A stretch of 64,000 nucleotides of DNA from the IMG/VR virus record IMGVR_UViG_3300032268_000986, positions 1 to 64,000 of that record. One strand, given 5' to 3'. Position 1 is the stretch's first letter. Every line of letters begins with the position of its first letter. This document shows positions 1 to 23,912 of this stretch, one piece after another. Made by a program: the position numbers and the translations under genes. The notes under the pieces are model-generated. The model was not told where the DNA came from. It made no database searches and saw nothing but the letters and a program-made list of their open reading frames with translations.

Positions 1-126
1 GGGTGCTGCTCCGCCACTGGGTGCTGCTCCGCCACTGGGTGCTGCTCCGCCACTGGGTGCTGCTCCGCCACTGGGTGCTGCTCCGCCACTGGGTGCTGCT
101 CCGCCACTGGGTGCTGCTCCGCCTCC
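1..126 (-). repeat. 18-nt tandem repeat (6 exact copies plus 1 variant, truncated by the window edge) encoding SGGAAP
   Basis: GGGTGCTGCTCCGCCACT units start at 1, 19, 37, 55, 73, 91 and 109; in frame with the minus-strand CDS. Confidence 0.95.
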
Positions 127-2493
127 AGCAGGTCTTGGTGCGGACGGAGCTGGTCTTGGCTGATTTTTTTCAATTCTTTCTTTAAGAACTTTGGCTTCTT
201 TTTCAAGTTCTTCGGTGCGTTTGGTTATTGTTTCGTTGACTCTCTTTAGAGACTCAATAGTGGCCTTGTCCCTAGTCTTGTCAAGTTTGGACAACTGATC
301 AGTGTTGGCTTTGAGATTTTCTCGCTGTCTGTTCAGCTGCTCATTTACTTTGTCTAATGCAGCCGTGTCTTTTTCTCGTTCTCGACGCTGATTATTTGCC
401 TCAAGGGCTGCTTGAGCGTTTGGACGTTCTCCGCCCATGCCTGCCCGAGACTGCGCTATCAAACTTTGTCTAGTTGCTTTGTCTTCGGCTGTTTTTGCTT
501 CGGCATCTTTTTTCTTAGCTTCTGCTGCCGCCGCTTCTCGTTGTGCCACAGCTACCTTGGCCGCTTCGGCTACCCGACCTTGTTCGGCCACAATGTCTTG
601 CAGACGACGTTGTTCTGCCATGGCCTCTGACAGTCTCAGGCGTGCTCTTTCGGCATCTTCCTGGGCTTTTTTACGTTCTTGTTCAGTGCCGGCTGAGTCA
701 ACCTTGGATGTGGCTGCACGTTCCTGTCTTTGCAGGCGTTGCACAGTTTGGTCAACACCAGCTGACCCGCCAACGCCTTGCAATTGATTCTTGGCTGCGT
801 CAGCTTTGCTTTGAGACTCTTTTAGTGCTTTGCGTTCGGCCTCCAGTGCTGCTTCAGCAGCTCTTTTAGCTTCTGCTGCGGCTGCACGTTCTGCGGCTGC
901 ACGTTCAGCTTCTTTCTTGGCTGCTGCTTCAGCGTCTGCTAGTTTTTGTTCTTGTTCAGTTTTCTCACGTGGTCCTATTCCCATGAATGACAACACTCGA
1001 CCCCAGAATCCCTTGGATTCATCTTTCACGCGGATCAATCCGTCGGCTGCTAAGTTGGCTTCCCTGGCCAACCTGGCCAACACGCCAGACGCTGCTTCGG
1101 ACGCTTGAGCTGCTGCCCTCATGCCTTTACGCAGTAATTCTTGCTCTTCCAGCATGGCATCTTGCTGGTTGACTATGGTCTGACTCTGTGCCCTAAGTGT
1201 TTCATCAGTTCCAAGCATTTGCTTGGCAGTTTCTTCACGAGCCTTGGCCATGCCAGCTGCAAATTTTCCATCCTTGAGCTCTTGTGCCTTGCGTTGTTCA
1301 GCATACGATCCAAATGTTTTGTCGTAGGCACCGGCTGCTGCCAAGGGCTGCATGTTCTTGTTGAAGGCAGCAACGTTGTTGTAAATGCTCTGTTGCGCAC
1401 GATCTATTTCCCCAGGAGCTTTTATTAACCCTTGCTTGACCATGTCAAACTGCTTGAGTGCATCACCTTGAGTTGCCAACAGCACTTGTCTTGCTTCTTC
1501 AGTGTTGGCAAAGCCTGACGCCAAATCAGTCATACCTTTCTGGAACTGCGGTCCCAGCTGGCCCGATGCTTGCACCATCACACGCAGATTTTCAGCTTCT
1601 TTAGTGCGTCCTTCGGCCACCAGCTGATCCAAGGTGGCAGCAAAACGCTGATTGCGCATGGCTTCTTCCATGGCTTTTTCTTGTTCTTTGCGCGAAATGC
1701 CAGTGACCTTGGTCAGTGCATCCTGCTCCATGATATACTTGCGGGCAGCTTCGGCTGTGGCTGCAAAGCCTTGTTCTTGCACACGAATAGCATTGCCCAA
1801 GCGAGTTTGCAACTTAATGTAACCCATGACAGCTTCGTTTTGCTGTTCGGCGTTGAGTCCCAGTCGCTCAAATTCAGCCCGCATGGGCTTCATGGTCTGA
1901 CGTAGATTTGCAAAGTCTGCTGACCCTTCAAACACTGTTCGGCCAAACAGGGCTAGATCTTGTGAACTTTCATTTACTAGACCTAGATACTTGTCCAGGT
2001 CTTGGAATCCAATGCCCAGCTTGTAGATGTCCTCGCCCAGTTGAGTGGTACCACCAGCTGCAACTGCACCAGATTTGGCTAGATCTTGAAAGCCTTTGTA
2101 CAGGGCATCGCCCTGTATGTTGACTTGTTTGAGTGCTTCGGCAGCAAATCCAATGGCCTTGCCTAGAGCCATGAGTGCTACTTTTACTGCAACACCACCG
2201 GGTATAATGGCCATGAGCATGGTGGTGGCCGACTGTGCAGCCCCGGCCATGCTGTCAATGCTGCTGTTGAACGCTGAGGCACCCTTTTGACCGTCGTACA
2301 TGGCCTTGGCCATTTTGCCAGCTGCATCCACCACTTGTGTGGGCGCCTTGCGCATGGCAGCCGAGAATCCTTCCACTCCCACAGTGGCATCTCGCAGGGC
2401 ATCGGCTGTGCTGCCGCTGAGACGCCCAAATCTTTCTAGTTCGTAGTTTACTTGTTCTGTTATCTCTGCCAGGCGGGGATTTTGATCTGCCAT
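1..2493 (-). CDS. Tape-measure-like tail protein (5' part; runs off the left edge of the window)
   Basis: ATG at 2493 begins MADQNPRLAEITEQVNYELERFGRLSGSTADALRDATVGVEGFSAAMRK...; the SGGAAP repeat at 1-126 lies in the same frame. Ala/Lys/Glu/Gln-rich helical composition, perfect TATAAATA upstream, adjacent to hub chaperone genes. Missing from the ORF track, presumably because no stop lies in the window; not every codon was checked. Confidence 0.75.
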   Translation of the reverse strand, partial: MADQNPRLAEITEQVNYELERFGRLSGSTADALRDATVGVEGFSAAMRKAPTQVVDAAGKMAKAMYDGQKGASAFNSSIDSMAGAAQSATTMLMAIIPGGVAVKVALMALGKAIGFAAEALKQVNIQGDALYKGFQDLAKSGAVAAGGTTQLGEDIYKLGIGFQDLDKYLGLVNESSQDLALFGRTVFEGSADFANLRQTMKPMRAEFERLGLNAEQQNEAVMGYIKLQTRLGNAIRVQEQGFAATAEAARKYIMEQDALTKVTGISRKEQEKAMEEAMRNQRFAATLDQLVAEGRTKEAENLRVMVQASGQLGPQFQKGMTDLASGFANTEEARQVLLATQGDALKQFDMVKQGLIKAPGEIDRAQQSIYNNVAAFNKNMQPLAAAGAYDKTFGSYAEQRKAQELKDGKFAAGMAKAREETAKQMLGTDETLRAQSQTIVNQQDAMLEEQELLRKGMRAAAQASEAASGVLARLAREANLAADGLIRVKDESKGFWGRVLSFMGIGPREKTEQEQKLADAEAAAKKEAERAAAERAAAAEAKRAAEAALEAERKALKESQSKADAAKNQLQGVGGSAGVDQTVQRLQRQERAATSKVDSAGTEQERKKAQEDAERARLRLSEAMAEQRRLQDIVAEQGRVAEAAKVAVAQREAAAAEAKKKDAEAKTAEDKATRQSLIAQSRAGMGGERPNAQAALEANNQRREREKDTAALDKVNEQLNRQRENLKANTDQLSKLDKTRDKATIESLKRVNETITKRTEELEKEAKVLKERIEKNQPRPAPSAPRPAGGGAAPSGGAAPSGGAAPSGGAAPSGGAAPSGGAAPSGGAAP

Positions 2494-2533: not shown

Positions 2534-3376
2534 ATGACCCCAAATGCTAACCCTTTGAACCAGTATTTTCGACAACCTGCAATTCACTTGCGTCTGCCAT
2601 CTGCTGGCAAATTCTGGCCTGATGAAGCTATTAGACGCACTGCCACCAATGAACTGCCCATTTACCCCATGACTGCCATAGACGAAATTACCTATCGCAC
2701 ACCGGATGCACTGTTCAATGGTCAGGCCGTGGTTTCAGTTATTCAAAGCTGTTGTCCAGCAATTCAGGATGCCTGGCAAACTCCGTCAGTGGACATCAAC
2801 TCACTGCTGGTGGCCATTCGCTTGGCCAGCTATGGCCATGACATGGAGATCAACACCACTTGCCCAGCCTGCTCCAACGAAGACGAGTACACCCTGGATC
2901 TGCGCACTGTGTTGGACCAACAGGTTTGTCCCGACTATGATCAGAACTTGCAAATGGGTGACTTGGAAATTGTGTTCAAGCCCATGACCTACCAAGAGCA
3001 GAACAAGACCAATGCCCTGCAATTTGAAGAACAGCGCATACTGAACATGTTGCCCAACTCAGATATTGATCCTGAAGTCAAGCTCAACAAACTCAACGAA
3101 GTGCTGCGCAAGATCACTGAAGTCACCGTGGATGCACTCACCTACAACATTCAAACTGTGCGCACACCCACTGCCATTGTGTCTGAGCCTGAACACATTC
3201 GAGAATTCTTGCTGAACTGTGATCGACGAATGTTCAATGCTGTGCGAGATCGTGTGATCGAACTGCGTGAATTCTCGGAACTCAAGCCTGTGGCAATAAA
3301 ATGCAACAACTGTGAAAACCAGTATCAACAACCACTTACCTTGGACATGGCAAGTTTTTTCGAGCACGCCTCCTGA
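2534..3376 (+). CDS. gp26: Baseplate hub assembly protein, T4 gp26-like
   Basis: N-terminal NPLxxYFRQP..LPSxG, PMTAIDE, AIRLASYG motif, two CxxC pairs (CPAC, CNNC), C-terminal SFF. Confidence 0.75.
   Translation: MTPNANPLNQYFRQPAIHLRLPSAGKFWPDEAIRRTATNELPIYPMTAIDEITYRTPDALFNGQAVVSVIQSCCPAIQDAWQTPSVDINSLLVAIRLASYGHDMEINTTCPACSNEDEYTLDLRTVLDQQVCPDYDQNLQMGDLEIVFKPMTYQEQNKTNALQFEEQRILNMLPNSDIDPEVKLNKLNEVLRKITEVTVDALTYNIQTVRTPTAIVSEPEHIREFLLNCDRRMFNAVRDRVIELREFSELKPVAIKCNNCENQYQQPLTLDMASFFEHAS
3355..3361 (+). other. Candidate -1 ribosomal frameshift heptamer T TTT TTC
   Basis: In-frame X XXY YYZ just before the stop of the gp26-like gene; the -1 frame is open into the next ORF. Confidence 0.6.
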
Positions 3377-3414
3377 TTCTAAAACCGGAGGACATTTCCA
3401 GCTGGATTGAAGGC

Positions 3415-3591
3415 ATGGAAAAAGAGGCCGATAGCATACGTCGGGAGGCGCTGAAACAATCATGGTACATGCGTGGTGGTCTCAGTTATGAACAAGCACT
3501 AAATCTCAGCTACAACGAACGCCTCATGATCAATGAACTCATCAAGGAAAACCTTGATACTACTAAAAAATCAGGCCTGCCTTTCTTCTAA
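3415..3591 (+). CDS. Small baseplate hub assembly chaperone, gp51-like (58 aa; possibly the C-terminal part of a frameshift fusion)
   Basis: MEKEADSIRREALKQSWYMRGGLSYEQALNLSYNERLMINELIKENLDTTKKSGLPFF; below the ORF-track cutoff; position matches gp26-gp51 synteny. Confidence 0.7.
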   Translation: MEKEADSIRREALKQSWYMRGGLSYEQALNLSYNERLMINELIKENLDTTKKSGLPFF

Positions 3592-4094
3592 TGGACCTAG
3601 CTCAAGTCACCGCAGATATTGAACAGTGGATCACAGGATTCCTGGAAGTACCGCATCCAGCCCTGGGCGGATTCTCTCCTTGTCCCTATGCACGGGCCGC
3701 AAGAATAAAACGCAGTTTTGAAATATATCTTGGCAGTGATCCCTATTTTGATCTCAAGAATCGAGCACGTTGGGGCATGGGCAATTTAGAAGTTATCATT
3801 TATGTGTATGATCCCCAGGAGTGGAGTCATGACCTGTTTAGTTCCAGCATTGAATCAGCCAACCGTGAACACCTGGTGCGCCGTGACATGCTGGCTCTGG
3901 AAGACCATCCCACAGATGTGGAAATGGTCAACGGGGTATGCATGAATCAAGGCACCTATGCGCTGGCCCTGGTGCAGAGTCTCAGTGACCTTGACACCAA
4001 GGCTCGACTCATGGCCAGCCGGGGATTCTATCATGACTGGCCGGAAGAATATCTAACTGGCCTGTTTCGGCACAGACAGGATCCCAGAACATGA
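3591..4094 (+). CDS. Hypothetical protein, DUF1415-like (CPYA motif, EDHP)
   Basis: W..FL....L..FSPCPYAR motif; start overlaps the upstream stop. Confidence 0.55.
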   Translation: MDLAQVTADIEQWITGFLEVPHPALGGFSPCPYARAARIKRSFEIYLGSDPYFDLKNRARWGMGNLEVIIYVYDPQEWSHDLFSSSIESANREHLVRRDMLALEDHPTDVEMVNGVCMNQGTYALALVQSLSDLDTKARLMASRGFYHDWPEEYLTGLFRHRQDPRT

Positions 4095-4525
4095 CATACC
4101 AGTTTGCCAGAATTGATCTTGCCAAGACCAATTACGAAATAAAAGTCAAGTGGGAATACTTACGTGACCCAGACATTCCTCAGTTGAACAGCATCTACCG
4201 AGACTACTGCAAGTACAAGCATTTTGCCAGTGTCATGCCCATGTTTGACAGTCGTTACACTGACCCCATGACCGATGTCATAGGATATTACGATGCAGAT
4301 CGTCTGGTGGCATTTTCACTGATTCGACGCTACGATGACAAGCATGCTCTGTGCGACCAGTTTGCATGGAACTACAACAATCCACGACTGCGTTTGGGGA
4401 TTGAAACAATGAAAGCCGAGTGTGCTATCTACAAGGCACGGGGATTTGAATATCTGTATCTTGAACAAGCACACTTATACAAAGCCAGCATGGATGGCTT
4501 TGAAATACTAGGACCACTGGAGTAA
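4091..4525 (+). CDS. GNAT-fold protein resembling the C-terminal domain of arginyl/leucyl-tRNA-protein transferases (ATE_C/Bpt)
   Basis: GYYDADRLVAFS and RLGIETMKAECAIYKARGFEYLYL resemble the ATE C-terminal LG..S.L.EI..A...G..Y.YLG pattern. Confidence 0.55.
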   Translation: MTYQFARIDLAKTNYEIKVKWEYLRDPDIPQLNSIYRDYCKYKHFASVMPMFDSRYTDPMTDVIGYYDADRLVAFSLIRRYDDKHALCDQFAWNYNNPRLRLGIETMKAECAIYKARGFEYLYLEQAHLYKASMDGFEILGPLE

Positions 4526-4527
4526 TC

Positions 4528-4860
4528 ATGGATTTATACACAATTTGGGCAGACAAAGAAGGTGACATCTCAGACCTTGACTGGGTAAACGGAATGAAGA
4601 GTTTTTTTGATCACTTGGTATCCGAAGACCGCATGGTATCATACCGAATCACACGCTGCAAGATGGGATTTCGTAGCATAGCAGACATGCCGGAATGGAT
4701 GATACTCATGGAGTTTCGTGACATGGGACAAATGGATTCAGCATTTCGACGAGTAGCACCACTGGAAGGTGAACTGGAAGACAAACACCGATCATTCAAT
4801 CAGTTTGTGTCAGGCACAATTCAACATGCCTTGTTTAGAGATTGGCCAGATCAATTCTAA
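4528..4860 (+). CDS. DUF6614-like small alpha/beta-barrel protein
   Basis: MDLYTIW...YRITRCKMGF...EWMILMEFRDMGQMDSAF...ALFRDWPD; RBS GGAG upstream. Confidence 0.55.
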   Translation: MDLYTIWADKEGDISDLDWVNGMKSFFDHLVSEDRMVSYRITRCKMGFRSIADMPEWMILMEFRDMGQMDSAFRRVAPLEGELEDKHRSFNQFVSGTIQHALFRDWPDQF

Positions 4861-22020: not shown

Positions 22021-23517
22021 ATGTCAAATTCGTTTGAGTTCACTACAGCAGCTGGCAAGCTATTTAAATTATCTGGACCACCAGGGTTTTCTCTGAGTCA
22101 AGCTCAGGCCATTTTTGACCAACAAGAAAGTGCAGGTAGTCTAGTAGGAATCAAGCCTGGCCAAATATTAAGTGCCGCTACACAGGCCGCAGGCGGGTTG
22201 TCATCGGCTGCTGCCCAGCTAGGACAATCTCTAAGTGGAGTCACTGGCGCTCTAGGCGCTGGCATACCTGGCGCAGCTGGCTTGATTGGTGGTGCAATTC
22301 CAGGCGGGCTAACATCCGCAGCCGCGGCCGTGAATCAACTCACAGGATCAGCAGGTTCAATTGCTGCTTCTGCGGTGGGCACAATTAGCAAAGCCATGGG
22401 GTCATTGCCTGTTACTAACGGCATTGATGTTGCAAATTTTGCCAAGGCTGAAACTGCCCTGGGATCAATTGGCAGCATGACTACATCACAAGTGACTGGC
22501 GTGTTGGCCCAGGCCAAAAATCTAGTGGGGCAAGCCACAGATGTCATGACCAACTCCAAGGGCCTGGGATCGTTTGGGCTTGATGCCAAGCAACTGGAAA
22601 CTGCTGGCATTCTCAAACCTGGAGTCAGCAACTTGATTGAATCGGGCGCCAGCACTCTTACATCGGCATTAAAGAGCCCCTTGGCTTTTACAGGAAAAGA
22701 TGGAATCAGCAGCGTGGGGGATTTGCTGGGCAGTTCATCTGCGCAAAGCAAGATTCAACAAGACCTTATGAGTTCTGGGGTAGCAGCATTGGGCGCGGCA
22801 GGAATTCCTACTGATGCATTAAACGCCCAGGGACTAGCAGGCATGGCGCTAAACGCCGCAAAAAGCATTCCTGGTGCCGAAGCCCTGGCCAAAGGATTAT
22901 CACTTCCCGGTGACGCAACTGGCGCACTCAAAGCAGCCATGGAAACCAACATTCGAGATGGTGCATTTGCTGTGAATTTAGCAGACTCCTTGCCCGGCGC
23001 ATTTAAAGAAACCGTCAAGGCGTTGCCCAGTTTGGGTACGGTGGACCGAGCCACACTGAATGCAGCTACAGATCGAATCTTGGGCAGTGCAAAAATTCCC
23101 AAACCCAGTTTTGGACCACCTGAGTCAGTGGTCAATGCATTTGCTGCAATCAATCCAGCTGGTCTCAAAGATGCCGCCGGCAATTTACCAGCCGCTGGAG
23201 ATTTGTTAAAAAAGGTAACCGGTGCTGTTGGTGGATTAACTGGTGCATTGTCAGGCGCTGTTGGTGGATTAACTGGTGCATTGTCAGGTGCTGTTGGTGG
23301 ATTAACCGGTGCATTGTCGGGCGCGGTTGGTGGATTAACCGGTGCATTGTCGGGCGCGGTTGGTGCAGTGTCGGGTCTAGCAGGCAAAGCCGCTGGAGTA
23401 CTAGGTGGCGCCAATCCACTCAAAGCCCTAGATGGAGCATTGGCGTCTGCCGGGTCTGCAGCAACGGCTGCATCATCAGTGCTCAGCAAGCTCACAAGTT
23501 CACTGCCTAAAGTTTAA
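22021..23517 (+). CDS. Gly/Ala-rich virion protein downstream of the spike gene
   Basis: 498-aa ORF within the baseplate operon; GLGSFGLDAKQLETAGILKPG segment; 11-aa repeats. Confidence 0.6.
   Translation: MSNSFEFTTAAGKLFKLSGPPGFSLSQAQAIFDQQESAGSLVGIKPGQILSAATQAAGGLSSAAAQLGQSLSGVTGALGAGIPGAAGLIGGAIPGGLTSAAAAVNQLTGSAGSIAASAVGTISKAMGSLPVTNGIDVANFAKAETALGSIGSMTTSQVTGVLAQAKNLVGQATDVMTNSKGLGSFGLDAKQLETAGILKPGVSNLIESGASTLTSALKSPLAFTGKDGISSVGDLLGSSSAQSKIQQDLMSSGVAALGAAGIPTDALNAQGLAGMALNAAKSIPGAEALAKGLSLPGDATGALKAAMETNIRDGAFAVNLADSLPGAFKETVKALPSLGTVDRATLNAATDRILGSAKIPKPSFGPPESVVNAFAAINPAGLKDAAGNLPAAGDLLKKVTGAVGGLTGALSGAVGGLTGALSGAVGGLTGALSGAVGGLTGALSGAVGAVSGLAGKAAGVLGGANPLKALDGALASAGSAATAASSVLSKLTSSLPKV
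23221..23364 (+). repeat. 33-nt tandem repeat (4 copies plus a partial) encoding GAVGGLTGALS
   Basis: Units at 23221, 23254, 23287, 23320 and 23353. Confidence 0.9.
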
Positions 23518-23528
23518 TAAATATCAGC

Positions 23529-23912
23529 ATGGCACAGACACAGACTTTTATTGGGTTTAACACTCAACAGCAGTATAAAAAATTTACCTTGACTGGCTTT
23601 GAACTGATCAAGCGCGATCTCCTGAACGCATTCAACATTCGTCAAGGACAATTGCCAGGTCGACCTGGCTATGGCACTGTGTTGTGGGATTACTTGTTTG
23701 AGAATCAAGTTGAAGCACTACAGACCAGCATCACTCAAGAAGTACAGCGTGTGGCCGGTGGTGACCCCAGGATCTACATTGCAGACGTGCAAGTGTCGCC
23801 CGAGCTAAATGGATTCATGATTGAACTAGAACTACAAATTGTAGGGTCTACCACAGCTCAACGCCTGTCTATATTTTTTGACCTAGAACAACGCAACGCC
23901 ACTTACGTATAA
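23529..23912 (+). CDS. gp25: Baseplate wedge subunit gp25-like
   Basis: LIKRDLLNAFNIRQGQLPGRPGYGTVLWDYLFE...DPRI. Confidence 0.85.
   Translation: MAQTQTFIGFNTQQQYKKFTLTGFELIKRDLLNAFNIRQGQLPGRPGYGTVLWDYLFENQVEALQTSITQEVQRVAGGDPRIYIADVQVSPELNGFMIELELQIVGSTTAQRLSIFFDLEQRNATYV

What the first reader, a model, noticed from the sequence alone, without database searches (positions are those of the whole stretch)
3340..3591. Programmed -1 frameshift predicted to fuse gp26-like and gp51-like hub chaperones
Seen: the gp26-like gene ends GCA AGT TTT TTC GAG CAC GCC TCC TGA, containing an in-frame slippery heptamer T TTT TTC (3355-3361). The -1 frame reads FRARLLILKPEDISSWIEGMEKEADS... with no stop and joins the 58-aa ORF, whose ATG lacks a strong RBS. 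Established: lambda G/GT-type tail chaperones next to tape-measure genes are made as a short form plus a -1 frameshift fusion. Here the pair sits head-to-head with the tape-measure-like gene. Inference: this T4-like gp26/gp51 pair works as a G/GT equivalent.
Basis: partly seen in the sequence, partly recalled or inferred. Interest (0 to 1): 0.7.

Follow-up and report, generated by a model that had tools for sequence, protein, structure and literature searches.

The report
Frameshift makes gp26 and gp51 forms
One tail-baseplate assembly gene of this freshwater jumbo phage very probably makes a short and a longer protein by a programmed -1 ribosomal slip; phage T4 encodes the same pair as two separate genes (26 and 51), and the slip site is conserved in over a hundred related phage sequences where the pair is annotated as two genes.

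Summary
The PF12322 (T4 gp26/gp51 family) gene at 2534-3376 carries T_TTT_TTC at 3355-3361 in X_XXY_YYZ register, 12 nt before its TGA. The -1 frame is open for 78 codons to TAA 3589-3591.

This is not chance. The same heptamer, register and open -1 frame occur in 118 homologous loci I examined (jumbo phages such as RaK2, PBECO4, PA5oct and Atu_ph07; T4-like cyanophages; KVP40-like Vibrio phages). The -1 peptide is conserved from its first residue, and no start codon is conserved.

T4 gp51 is itself a PF12322 domain with a C-terminal tail that aligns to this -1 extension. T4 gp26 stops right after the invariant FF. T4 has two PF12322 genes; the window's genome and four relatives tested have one. 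So the short form corresponds to gp26 and the frameshift fusion (352 aa) to gp51.

The "G/GT equivalent" reading holds for expression logic and for gene order in relatives. It does not hold for family membership: the fold has no solved relative and matches no tail-chaperone (TAC) family. The stimulatory RNA element and binding to the tape-measure-like neighbour remain unresolved. Nine literature searches found no description of this frameshift.

The parts
2534..3376 (+). 0-frame ORF encoding the short form (280 aa), a gp26/gp51-family baseplate hub assembly protein. It has a 4-Cys zinc ribbon (C110, C113, C257, C260) and an invariant C-terminal FF (F275, F276).
   Evidence: Pfam PF12322 at 1.7e-14 (54.5 bits against a cut-off of 24.5) and phrog_150 at 1.4e-15. 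Conserved columns in alignments A1 and A4. AlphaFold2 model with pLDDT 95.2 and pTM 0.90. It is the only PF12322 copy in the 342,865-bp genome.
3355..3361 (+). Slippery heptamer T_TTT_TTC in X_XXY_YYZ register. It spans the last base of the Ser codon AGT and the two invariant Phe codons.
   Evidence: An identical heptamer and register occur in 116 homologous loci and T_TTT_TTT in two more. The codon before it always ends in T, although its amino acid varies (S, H, N, R, Y, D, A, V).
3374..3376 (+). 0-frame stop codon TGA, 12 nt after the heptamer. It ends the short form (...SFFEHAS).
   Evidence: In homologs the stop lies 3-33 nt after the heptamer.
3355..3591 (+). -1 frame extension of 78 codons (FFRARLL...SWYMRGG...NER...LPFF) plus stop TAA at 3589-3591. 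With residues 1-274 of the 0-frame ORF it gives a 352-aa long form (...LTLDMAS-FFRARLL...), the equivalent of T4 gp51.
   Evidence: tblastn of this peptide matches jumbo phages from residue 1 across the gene overlap. It aligns to the C-terminus of T4 gp51. hhalign against the cyanophage extension gives E 1.2e-3 and against gp51 tails 3.8e-3. The AlphaFold2 model is all-helical with pLDDT 87.
3415..3591 (+). It is the distal part of the -1 extension and not an independent gene.
   Evidence: The 20 codons upstream of its ATG are conserved at protein level back to the heptamer. Homologs have no ATG at this position: in L020 the first Met lies inside WYMRGG, and in RaK2 it is residue 33.
3367..3450 (+). 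Candidate frameshift-stimulating RNA structure. An 11-bp stem pairs CGCCUCCUGAU (3367-3377) with GUCGGGAGGCG (3440-3450) and encloses a smaller hairpin. It starts 5 nt after the heptamer. Unproven.
   Evidence: strand folding gives -32.2 kcal/mol with z = -3.15. Many homologs have a predicted stem starting 6-8 nt after the heptamer, but with non-homologous 3' partners. The consensus fold of the window's clade is weak, 6 bp at -1.3 kcal/mol.
1..2493 (-). Divergently transcribed neighbour: a large tape-measure-like protein (831+ aa) with a hydrophobic Gly/Ala segment and a Lys/Glu/Ala-rich coiled region. It is cut at the contig start inside a GGAAPS tandem repeat.
   Evidence: Homologs are 837-955+ aa and sit in the same divergent position. 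The RaK2 homolog is annotated as similar to a tape measure protein. The CBB homolog is a virion protein with 29 peptides (PMC5259590). There is no Pfam or PHROG label and no BLAST similarity to T4 gp29.

Best explanation
A single gene of the T4 gp26/gp51 family (PF12322) is decoded in two ways. Most ribosomes read the 0 frame to TGA 3374-3376 and make a 280-aa short form ending ...SFFEHAS, the counterpart of T4 gp26. A fraction of ribosomes pause with tRNA-Phe on UUU (P site) and UUC (A site) of U_UUU_UUC (3355-3361). They slip back one base, re-pair on UUU UUU and continue in the -1 frame for 76 more codons. This gives a 352-aa long form (...SFF-RARLL...LPFF), the counterpart of T4 gp51. Both forms keep the zinc-ribbon domain and the invariant FF; only the long form carries a about 75-residue helical tail. 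By analogy with T4, where gp26 and gp51 are both needed for baseplate hub assembly and gp51 is absent from the virion, I infer that the two forms act together as assembly chaperones for the hub and tape-measure core of the tail. That is the same logic as lambda G/GT. T4 and its close relatives replaced the frameshift with two diverged paralogous genes, 26 and 51. Shown: the signal, its conservation, the homology to gp26 and gp51, and the copy numbers. Inferred: that slippage is ribosomal, its efficiency, the RNA stimulator, the chaperone role and the partners.
For: 1) Heptamer, register, stop and open -1 frame are as described.
2) Conservation. 20 of 20 loci in the window's clade and first jumbo relatives have the heptamer. 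So do 12 of 14 further jumbo phages, two of them as T_TTT_TTT. So do S-WAM1, OLIVR5 and LPCS28, 80 of 80 evaluable IMG/VR loci, S-PM2 and a KVP40-like Vibrio phage, and the second paralog of L131. The -1 ORF is always 59-84 codons.
3) The -1 peptide is conserved from residue 1 (FFR..LL..PEEI...SWYMRGG...ER) with no conserved start codon. GenBank starts for the small ORF are inconsistent and fall inside the conserved region.
4) T4 gp51 hits PF12322 at 3.9e-52, phrog_150 at 2.6e-84 and phrog_634 over residues 147-246. The cyanophage -1 extension hits phrog_634 at 2.9e-31.
5) hhalign of the cyanophage extension against gp51 tails gives P 95%, E 2e-8. The jumbo extension against the cyanophage extension gives E 1.2e-3. 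The jumbo fusion profile against the gp51 family aligns 16-342 to 4-249 with E 5e-4.
6) T4 gp26 ends at FFELL, without a slippery site and with gene 25 directly after it.
7) PF12322 copies per genome: T4 has 2; S-WAM1, OLIVR5, LPCS28, RaK2 and the window's genome have 1.
8) Among the 150 best of 1215 representative clusters, 128 end within 12 residues after FF and none carries the extension in frame, so both forms are kept.
9) A stem is predicted to start 5 nt after the heptamer, z = -3.15.
10) Independent DNA contigs and a metatranscriptome contig keep T6 with no indel.
11) T4 gp26 and gp51 are listed as hub assembly chaperones, with gp51 absent from the particle (PMC3004832). The gp26-like protein and the small ORF are absent from the CBB virion mass-spectrometry table, while the tape-measure-like neighbour has 29 peptides (PMC5259590).
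Against: There is no direct evidence of the fusion protein: no proteomics, reporter assay or ribosome profiling. FF is invariant for protein reasons even in T4 gp26, so part of the TTT TTC conservation is not independent evidence. The independent parts are the preceding T, the codon choice and the -1 ORF. No stimulatory RNA structure is conserved across clades. The window's extension has no direct HMM hit to phrog_634, and its link to gp51 tails rests on E about 1e-3 profile comparisons plus position. Some lineages may express the tail as a separate peptide: Cygsa01 has no heptamer and an ATG overlapping the stop, and Atu_ph07, Phosso and PBECO4 also have an ATG overlapping the stop. The chaperone and tape-measure role is extrapolated from T4 genetics. 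The fold has no solved relative. The neighbour is called a tape measure only by size, position and a relative's annotation.
Confidence: 0.8

Rival explanations
1. Transcriptional slippage rather than ribosomal slippage. RNA polymerase adds one extra U in the U6 run in a fraction of transcripts. This puts the downstream sequence in frame and yields the identical long protein (...SFFRARLL...).
For: One inserted U gives exactly the same product as a -1 ribosomal shift (read). The preceding conserved T lengthens the homopolymer as well as completing X_XXY_YYZ. RsoM2USA and CM1 have longer T runs, T8 and T7.
Against: The run is only six T in 116 of 118 loci. Its last position is held at C rather than T, which limits run length but fits tRNA-Phe re-pairing. 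Known programmed transcriptional slippage generally uses runs of about 9 or more (my own knowledge, not tested here). The one metatranscriptome contig across the site shows no insertion, but contigs hide minority variants.
Confidence: 0.07
2. There are two separate proteins and no fusion. The downstream ORF is translated on its own by internal initiation or by termination-reinitiation after the gp26-like stop, and the heptamer reflects only the conserved FF codons.
For: GenBank records annotate two genes, gp26 and gp51 'baseplate hub assembly catalyst', in hundreds of phages. In Atu_ph07, Phosso and PBECO4 an ATG overlaps the stop codon, and in Cygsa01 there is no heptamer and an ATG overlaps the stop. 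FF is invariant even in T4 gp26, which lacks the shift.
Against: No start codon is conserved. The first Met of the -1 ORF ranges from residue 4 to about 40, and conserved residues (FFR..LL..PEEI) lie upstream of it. The window has no ATG, GTG or TTG near its stop, and its ATG at 3415 lacks a usable Shine-Dalgarno site. The third base of the codon before FF is T in all loci although the amino acid varies. T4 gp51 shows that the tail functions covalently attached to a PF12322 domain.
Confidence: 0.08
3. It is an artefact: a sequencing or assembly error in a homopolymer has split one ordinary ORF, or the juxtaposition arose by chance.
For: Homopolymer runs are error-prone, and the window comes from a metagenome assembly.
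Against: The same T6 and two-frame layout occur in finished genomes of cultured phages and in over 100 independent assemblies. Independent contigs from other samples show no indel. None of the 150 best representative proteins has the extension in frame.
Confidence: 0.01

Closest known systems
Bacteriophage T4 gp26 and gp51 (baseplate hub assembly proteins, Pfam PF12322 T4_baseplate)
   Same: The window's ORF is a PF12322 member with the same zinc ribbon and C-terminal FF. The short form ends where gp26 ends. The long form aligns end to end with gp51, including its tail (F-K/R-x-LL-x-x-P-E/D-E-I ... P/S-x-ER). The gene lies next to, and divergent from, the hub and tape-measure side of the tail module, as gene 26 does in T4.
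   Different: T4 and core Straboviridae encode the two forms as two diverged paralogous genes with no slippery site. Here one gene makes both forms by recoding. The window's protein is about 70 residues longer at the N-terminus and shares only about 20% identity with the T4 proteins. Its tail has a about 14-residue insertion relative to gp51.
Lambda gpG/gpGT-type tail assembly chaperones (the conserved -1 frameshift of Xu, Hendrix and Duda 2004, cited from my own knowledge and from reference lists seen)
   Same: A short form plus a C-terminally extended form are made by -1 slippage at an X_XXY_YYZ heptamer near the 3' end of the first ORF, and this is conserved across very divergent phages. 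It is an assembly factor of the tail core. In cyanophage, KVP40-like, LPCS28 and OLIVR5 relatives the order is tube (or tube initiator), gp26, extension, then a large 600-1170-aa protein, resembling V-G-T-H.
   Different: There is no sequence or fold similarity to any known TAC family, and no solved relative at all. The protein is 200-300 aa with a zinc ribbon, larger than the roughly 100-140 aa I recall for TACs. The extension is short (59-84 aa). In the window and other jumbo phages the gene is divergent from the tape-measure-like gene. Binding to the tape measure or tube is untested.
Cyanophage 'gp51 baseplate hub assembly catalyst' small ORFs (phrog_634)
   Same: They occupy the same position, directly after the FF of the gp26-like gene in the -1 frame and behind the same heptamer. 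They share the motif around Y-x-x-x-L-x-M-x-P/S-x-ER.
   Different: The window's extension does not reach phrog_634 by HMM and is 10-15 residues longer. In databases these ORFs are treated as independent genes, which my analysis contradicts.

Membership tests
Pfam PF12322 T4_baseplate (T4 gp26/gp51 hub assembly family) | Match to the family HMM above the curated cut-off | tested here: met
   54.5 bits against a cut-off of 24.5, E 1.7e-14. phrog_150 at 1.4e-15. Six-frame genome search gives 2.3e-15.
Pfam PF12322 T4_baseplate (T4 gp26/gp51 hub assembly family) | Four-cysteine zinc ribbon and invariant C-terminal Phe-Phe shared with T4 gp26 | tested here: met
   C110, C113, C257, C260, F275 and F276 are invariant or nearly invariant in an 18-sequence alignment that includes T4 gp26. 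FF is invariant in 91 sequences.
Pfam PF12322 T4_baseplate (T4 gp26/gp51 hub assembly family) | Required for baseplate hub assembly | not testable with these tools
   Known for T4 only (PMC3004832).
T4 gp51-type long form (PF12322 domain plus C-terminal tail, phrog_634) | C-terminal tail homologous to that of gp51 | tested here: inconclusive
   No direct HMM or BLAST hit for the window's tail. hhalign gives E 1.2e-3 against cyanophage tails and 3.8e-3 against gp51 tails. The fusion profile aligns through the tail of gp51 with E 5e-4. The cyanophage tail against the gp51 tail is solid (E 2e-8).
T4 gp51-type long form (PF12322 domain plus C-terminal tail, phrog_634) | Tail attached directly after the FF of the PF12322 domain | tested here: met
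   The -1 extension starts at the FF codons. T4 gp51 has ...DVF-KLLVNPDEI... at the aligned position.
Programmed -1 ribosomal frameshift site | X_XXY_YYZ heptamer in the 0-frame register with an open -1 frame beyond the 0-frame stop | tested here: met
   T_TTT_TTC at 3355-3361, with the -1 ORF running 71 codons past the stop. It is unique among 54 in-frame heptamers in the window.
Programmed -1 ribosomal frameshift site | Phylogenetic conservation of the heptamer and of the -1 ORF | tested here: met
   118 loci.
Programmed -1 ribosomal frameshift site | Stimulatory RNA structure 5-9 nt downstream, or an upstream Shine-Dalgarno-like element | tested here: inconclusive
   The window has a stem from +5 with z = -3.15. 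Lineage-specific stems at +6 to +8 are seen in many homologs. There is no conserved consensus structure. No obvious upstream Shine-Dalgarno element is seen.
Programmed -1 ribosomal frameshift site | Detection of the trans-frame protein | not testable with these tools
   Needs proteomics or a reporter assay.
Lambda G/GT-type tail assembly chaperone | Sequence or fold membership in a known TAC family | tested here: not met
   The only Pfam hit is PF12322. Foldseek against PDB gives a best E of 0.28. VIA-align gives only generic helical hairpins with Z up to 8.1.
Lambda G/GT-type tail assembly chaperone | Located between the tail tube gene and the tape measure gene, on the same strand | tested here: inconclusive
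   Not so in the window, where the gene is divergent from the tape-measure-like gene. Relatives have the order tube, gp26, extension, large protein. The large proteins carry no tape-measure label and have no BLAST similarity to T4 gp29.
Lambda G/GT-type tail assembly chaperone | Short and long forms from a -1 frameshift near the end of the first ORF | tested here: met
   (sequence level only).
Lambda G/GT-type tail assembly chaperone | Binds the tape measure protein (and tube protein through the extension) and is absent from virions | not testable with these tools
   Literature only. T4 gp51 is absent from particles. CBB_250 and CBB_249 are not in the CBB virion mass-spectrometry table.

The most novel reading that the evidence does not exclude
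The long-missing T4-type counterpart of the universal G/GT tail-chaperone frameshift is the gp26/gp51 pair. The ancestral state, still the majority state in T4-like cyanophages, KVP40-like phages, RaK2-, PA5oct- and Atu_ph07-type jumbo phages and others, is one gene decoded by -1 ribosomal frameshifting into gp26-like and gp51-like forms. T4 itself is the derived exception, having fixed the two forms as duplicated genes. Hundreds of 'gp51 baseplate hub assembly catalyst' ORFs in databases would then be mis-annotated fragments of a trans-frame protein. The 'catalytic' gp51 of T4 would be understood as the GT-like long chaperone of the hub and tape-measure complex, built on a fold unrelated to known TACs.
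Probability: 0.5. Interest if true: 0.85.

Novelty: new member of a known kind. Interest (0 to 1): 0.72.

Why it matters
The -1 frameshift in tail assembly chaperone genes is one of the most conserved recoding events in tailed phages. As far as I know, and as far as nine literature searches show, it has not been identified in T4-like phages.

This analysis ties the frameshift to a family with 50 years of genetics behind it (T4 genes 26 and 51). It explains why T4 has two paralogous hub assembly proteins, one with a C-terminal tail. It also predicts the fixed-ratio logic behind gp51's 'catalytic' behaviour.

On the practical side, it corrects the annotation of a core gene pair in at least 582 GenBank phage records and in many metagenomic phages (cyanophages, jumbo phages, Vibrio and Aeromonas phages). 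It provides a natural example of a frameshift replaced by gene duplication. It also makes the role of gp26 and gp51 directly testable in T4, where the two forms can be manipulated separately.

Tried and rejected
- **DNA search:** blastn of the locus against the phage collection found no match.
- **Direct comparison with T4:** BLAST of the -1 product against T4 gp51, and of the window's ORF against gp51, gave nothing. The link needed profiles and alignment.
- **Family searches on the extension:** Pfam and PHROG searches of the window's extension returned only noise.
- **Fold search of the extension:** the model (pLDDT 87) has no PDB match with E below 3.
- **Fold search of the gp26-like model:** Foldseek against PDB and VIA-align against 48,161 chains gave no meaningful match. 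BFVD returned only homologous phage 'baseplate hub assembly' proteins.
- **Complex prediction:** tape-measure-like residues 1-700 with the gp26-like protein gave 'no answer' (score 0.00, controls not run). This is not evidence either way.
- **Consensus RNA structure:** it was weak for the window's clade and absent for 38 cyanophage sequences. I therefore do not claim a conserved stimulator.
- **Other end of the contig:** I looked there for the rest of the tape-measure-like gene and found none.
- **Tape-measure identity of the neighbours:** PHROG and BLAST against T4 gp29 gave no label for the window's neighbour or for the large downstream proteins of relatives.
- **RNA runs:** these are held only as contigs, so minority U7 transcripts cannot be assessed.
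- **Literature:** nine full-text searches found no description of this frameshift. The library lacks most subscription journals, so prior description cannot be excluded.
Full report
**Observation.** The window's ORF 2534-3376 (+) ends GCA AGT TTT TTC GAG CAC GCC TCC TGA. The heptamer T_TTT_TTC occupies 3355-3361 in X_XXY_YYZ register, and the TGA stop is at 3374-3376. The -1 frame read from 3355 gives FFRARLLILKPEDISSWIEGMEKEADS... and stays open for 78 codons. It passes through the ATG (3415) of the 58-aa ORF to TAA 3589-3591. Among the 54 in-frame XXXYYYZ heptamers in long ORFs of the window, this is the only one whose -1 frame continues past the 0-frame stop.

**What the gene is.** The 280-aa product matches Pfam PF12322 (T4_baseplate) at 1.7e-14 and phrog_150 'baseplate hub' at 1.4e-15. 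The window belongs to a 342,865-bp, 99%-complete IMG/VR virus record, that is, a jumbo phage, found in freshwater and lake metagenomes. The gene is the only PF12322 copy in that genome. It sits head to head with a gene for a protein of more than 831 aa on the minus strand (1-2493) that is cut at the contig start inside a GGAAPS repeat.

Homologs of that neighbour are 837-955+ aa and always occupy the same divergent position in related jumbo phages. The RaK2 homolog is annotated as tape-measure-like. The CBB homolog is an abundant virion protein (PMC5259590). It has no family label and no detectable similarity to T4 gp29. 'Tape measure' therefore remains an inference.

**Conservation of the signal.** tblastn with the -1 peptide hit jumbo phages (Atu_ph07, Phosso and Asteriusvirus-like Salmonella phages). 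The match started at residue 1, which means it crossed the overlap with the end of the upstream gene. I then read the junctions.

- The window, 16 IMG/VR relatives (35-90% identity) and Atu_ph07, Phosso and Munch all have T_TTT_TTC in the same register, 3-33 nt before the stop, and a 72-79-codon -1 ORF.
- PA5oct, PBECO4, RaK2, GAP32, CBB, a Vibrio jumbo phage, fHe-Yen9-04, SCTP-2, XaC1 and Serratia BF show the same. RsoM2USA and CM1 have T_TTT_TTT.
- The exceptions were an unverified, truncated assembly (CMSTMSU) and one uncultured phage (LR756508).
- The signal is not confined to jumbo phages. The cyanophage S-WAM1, Agrobacterium phage OLIVR5 and the straboviral Cronobacter phage LPCS28 have it. 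So do 80 of 80 evaluable IMG/VR loci recovered with the S-WAM1 and RaK2 proteins, and S-PM2 and a KVP40-like Vibrio phage.
- The codon before the Phe codons always ends in T although it encodes S, H, N, R, Y, D, A or V.
- With the window's codon usage, NNT TTT TTC would be expected in roughly 6% of FF dipeptides.
- The -1 peptide is conserved from its first residues (FFR-x-x-LL-x-x-PEEI ... SWYMRGG ... ER ...). There is no conserved start codon: the first Met lies anywhere from residue 4 to about 40. Database annotations start the small ORF at arbitrary internal Met codons.
- Independent DNA contigs and one metatranscriptome contig covering 3296-3607 keep the T6 run without indels.

Sequencing error and chance are excluded.

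**The link to T4.** T4 gp26 (208 aa) ends ...EFFELL with non-slippery codons (TTC TTT) and is followed directly by gene 25. The FF is invariant across the family, T4 included.

The unexpected result was that T4 gp51 (249 aa) is itself a PF12322 protein. It hits PF12322 at 3.9e-52 over residues 1-201 and phrog_150 at 2.6e-84. Its C-terminal region falls in phrog_634 'baseplate hub assembly catalyst'. The cyanophage -1 extension hits phrog_634 at 2.9e-31.

I reconstructed the trans-frame proteins and aligned them with T4 gp51 and gp26. gp51 runs through the junction (...DVF-KLLVNPDEIF...MIPAERGFVLKLIEK against ...SFF-RARLLILKPEDI...LSYNERLMINELIKEN), while gp26 stops at the FF.

Profile comparisons support this at three levels:

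- The cyanophage extension against gp51 tails gives P 95%, E 2e-8.
- The jumbo extension gives E 1.2e-3 against the cyanophage extension and 3.8e-3 against gp51 tails, over the same motif.
- The jumbo fusion profile against the gp51 family aligns 16-342 to 4-249 with E 5e-4.

T4 carries two PF12322 genes (26 and 51). S-WAM1, OLIVR5, LPCS28, RaK2 and the window's genome carry one. Core Straboviridae (Aeromonas, Acinetobacter and Pseudomonas representatives) share the T4 layout gp27<-gp51<- | ->gp26->gp25, without a heptamer.

In a search of 1.8 billion representatives, 1215 clusters matched. Of the best 150, 128 end within 12 residues after FF, and none has the extension fused in frame. Selection therefore keeps both a short and a long product.

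**Mechanism.** The best explanation is programmed -1 ribosomal frameshifting on U_UUU_UUC. It produces a 280-aa gp26-equivalent and a 352-aa gp51-equivalent. The window has a predicted stem starting 5 nt after the heptamer (3367-3377 paired with 3440-3450; -32.2 kcal/mol, z = -3.15). Many homologs have some stem starting 6-8 nt downstream. The partners are not homologous, however, and no consensus structure emerges. In cyanophages the only invariant feature is a TAG stop 3 nt after the heptamer. The stimulator is unresolved.

Transcriptional slippage would give the same protein and cannot be excluded from sequence alone. The run is only six T, though, and its last position is held at C. Independent translation of the small ORF is contradicted by the missing start codons and by conservation upstream of them. 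It may apply in a few lineages, such as Cygsa01, which lacks the heptamer and has an ATG overlapping the stop.

**Function.** T4 reviews list gp26 and gp51 as hub assembly chaperones and state that gp51 is required but absent from the particle (PMC3004832). In CBB the gp26-like protein and the small ORF are missing from the virion mass-spectrometry table, while the neighbouring large protein has 29 peptides.

In S-WAM1, S-PM2, LPCS28, OLIVR5 and a KVP40-like phage the order is tube (or tube initiator), gp26, extension, then a 600-1170-aa protein.

Membership in a TAC family fails. The AlphaFold2 model (pLDDT 95.2, pTM 0.90) has no solved relative. It matches only phage 'baseplate hub assembly' proteins in BFVD. 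The helical extension (pLDDT 87) matches nothing.

**Novelty.** Nine full-text searches found no paper describing this frameshift. GenBank annotates the pair as two genes in the 582 records hit by the cyanophage extension, and none is joined. The library is incomplete, so prior description cannot be ruled out.

I classify it as a new member of a known kind: the conserved -1 frameshift of tail assembly genes, here in an unrelated protein family. In T4, gene duplication has replaced the frameshift.

**Verdict.** The 'gp51-like' label is right once gp51 is understood as the fusion equivalent. The G/GT equivalence is plausible as an analogy but untested.

Noticed in passing
window 1-250: The contig starts inside an 18-nt tandem repeat that encodes GGAAPS about 7 times at the C-terminal end of the tape-measure-like protein (minus strand). 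The repeat probably broke the assembly. The other end of the 342,865-bp record does not continue the gene.
   Followed up: partly
L131:1801-3699 (Logan contig, freshwater-type relative): Two PF12322 genes lie in tandem. The first (276 aa) ends SNFVKK* with no FF, no heptamer and no open -1 frame. The second (274 aa) ends SDFFV* with T_TTT_TTC and a 78-codon extension. This is a duplication that coexists with the frameshift, intermediate between the window's state and T4's.
   Followed up: partly
L043:1372-2282 (Pseudomonas phage Cygsa01, phiW-14-like): The gp26-like gene ends SLNSIFT* (AGC ATT TTC ACC TAA TG) without a canonical heptamer. The small 'gp51' ORF starts at an ATG that overlaps the stop. 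This may be a third way of expressing the tail, as a separate coupled peptide.
   Followed up: no
L044-L123 (T4-like cyanophage loci), for example L044:1776-1790: In all 38 distinct cyanophage junction sequences the heptamer is followed by GNN TAG, so an invariant TAG stop lies 3 nt after the slip site. No RNA structure is conserved. An adjacent stop codon might itself be the stimulator.
   Followed up: partly
L034:2768 and L035:2771 (Ralstonia RsoM2USA, Stenotrophomonas CM1); L130:1520-1540: Variant slip sites. T_TTT_TTT occurs with 82-84-codon extensions in two jumbo phages. A possible T_TTT_TTA (AAT TTT TTA GAC TAA, protein ending ANFLD*) occurs in a short metagenomic contig that ends before the extension could be read.
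   Followed up: no
window 22021-23517 (+), heptamer at about 23208; window 23529-23912: A 498-aa Gly/Ala-rich protein with GGLTGALSGAV repeats contains an in-frame A_AAA_AAG. Its 100-codon open -1 frame ends 3 codons before the 0-frame stop. This is probably a compositional effect of the repeat. The next gene has the size expected of a gp25-type baseplate wedge protein; I ran no family search on it.
   Followed up: no
window 3296-3607; runs X1-X3 and X19: A lake metatranscriptome contig (12 substitutions, no gaps) spans the heptamer, the stop and the whole extension as one piece. In DNA runs of the same study several short contigs of more distant relatives align only to about 3326-3380. The slip-site region is thus an island of nucleotide conservation.
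   Followed up: partly
L001:3115-3237 (Atu_ph07), L135:1003-1095 (Vibrio phage D479), L134:916-1089 (S-PM2): Database annotations of the small ORF begin at different internal Met codons (40, 30 and 57 aa products), inside the conserved region. RaK2 and PA5oct do not annotate it at all.
   Followed up: yes
PMC5259590, section on cell wall degrading enzymes: The CBB paper's text mentions 'CBB_250' as an 894-aa gp5-like protein. This fits CBB_240, not the 285-aa gp26-like CBB_250, so it is probably a typo. The GenBank record labels CBB_250 'structural protein' although it is not in the paper's mass-spectrometry table.
   Followed up: partly
window 3591-4860: Directly downstream, with ATG 3591 overlapping the extension's TAA, lie three small genes. 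They encode 167 aa (weak DUF6875 and phrog_28122 hits), 144 aa (no hit) and 110 aa (DUF6614, 1.2e-20). Their function is unknown, and they are not conserved next to the gp26-like gene in other jumbo phages.
   Followed up: no
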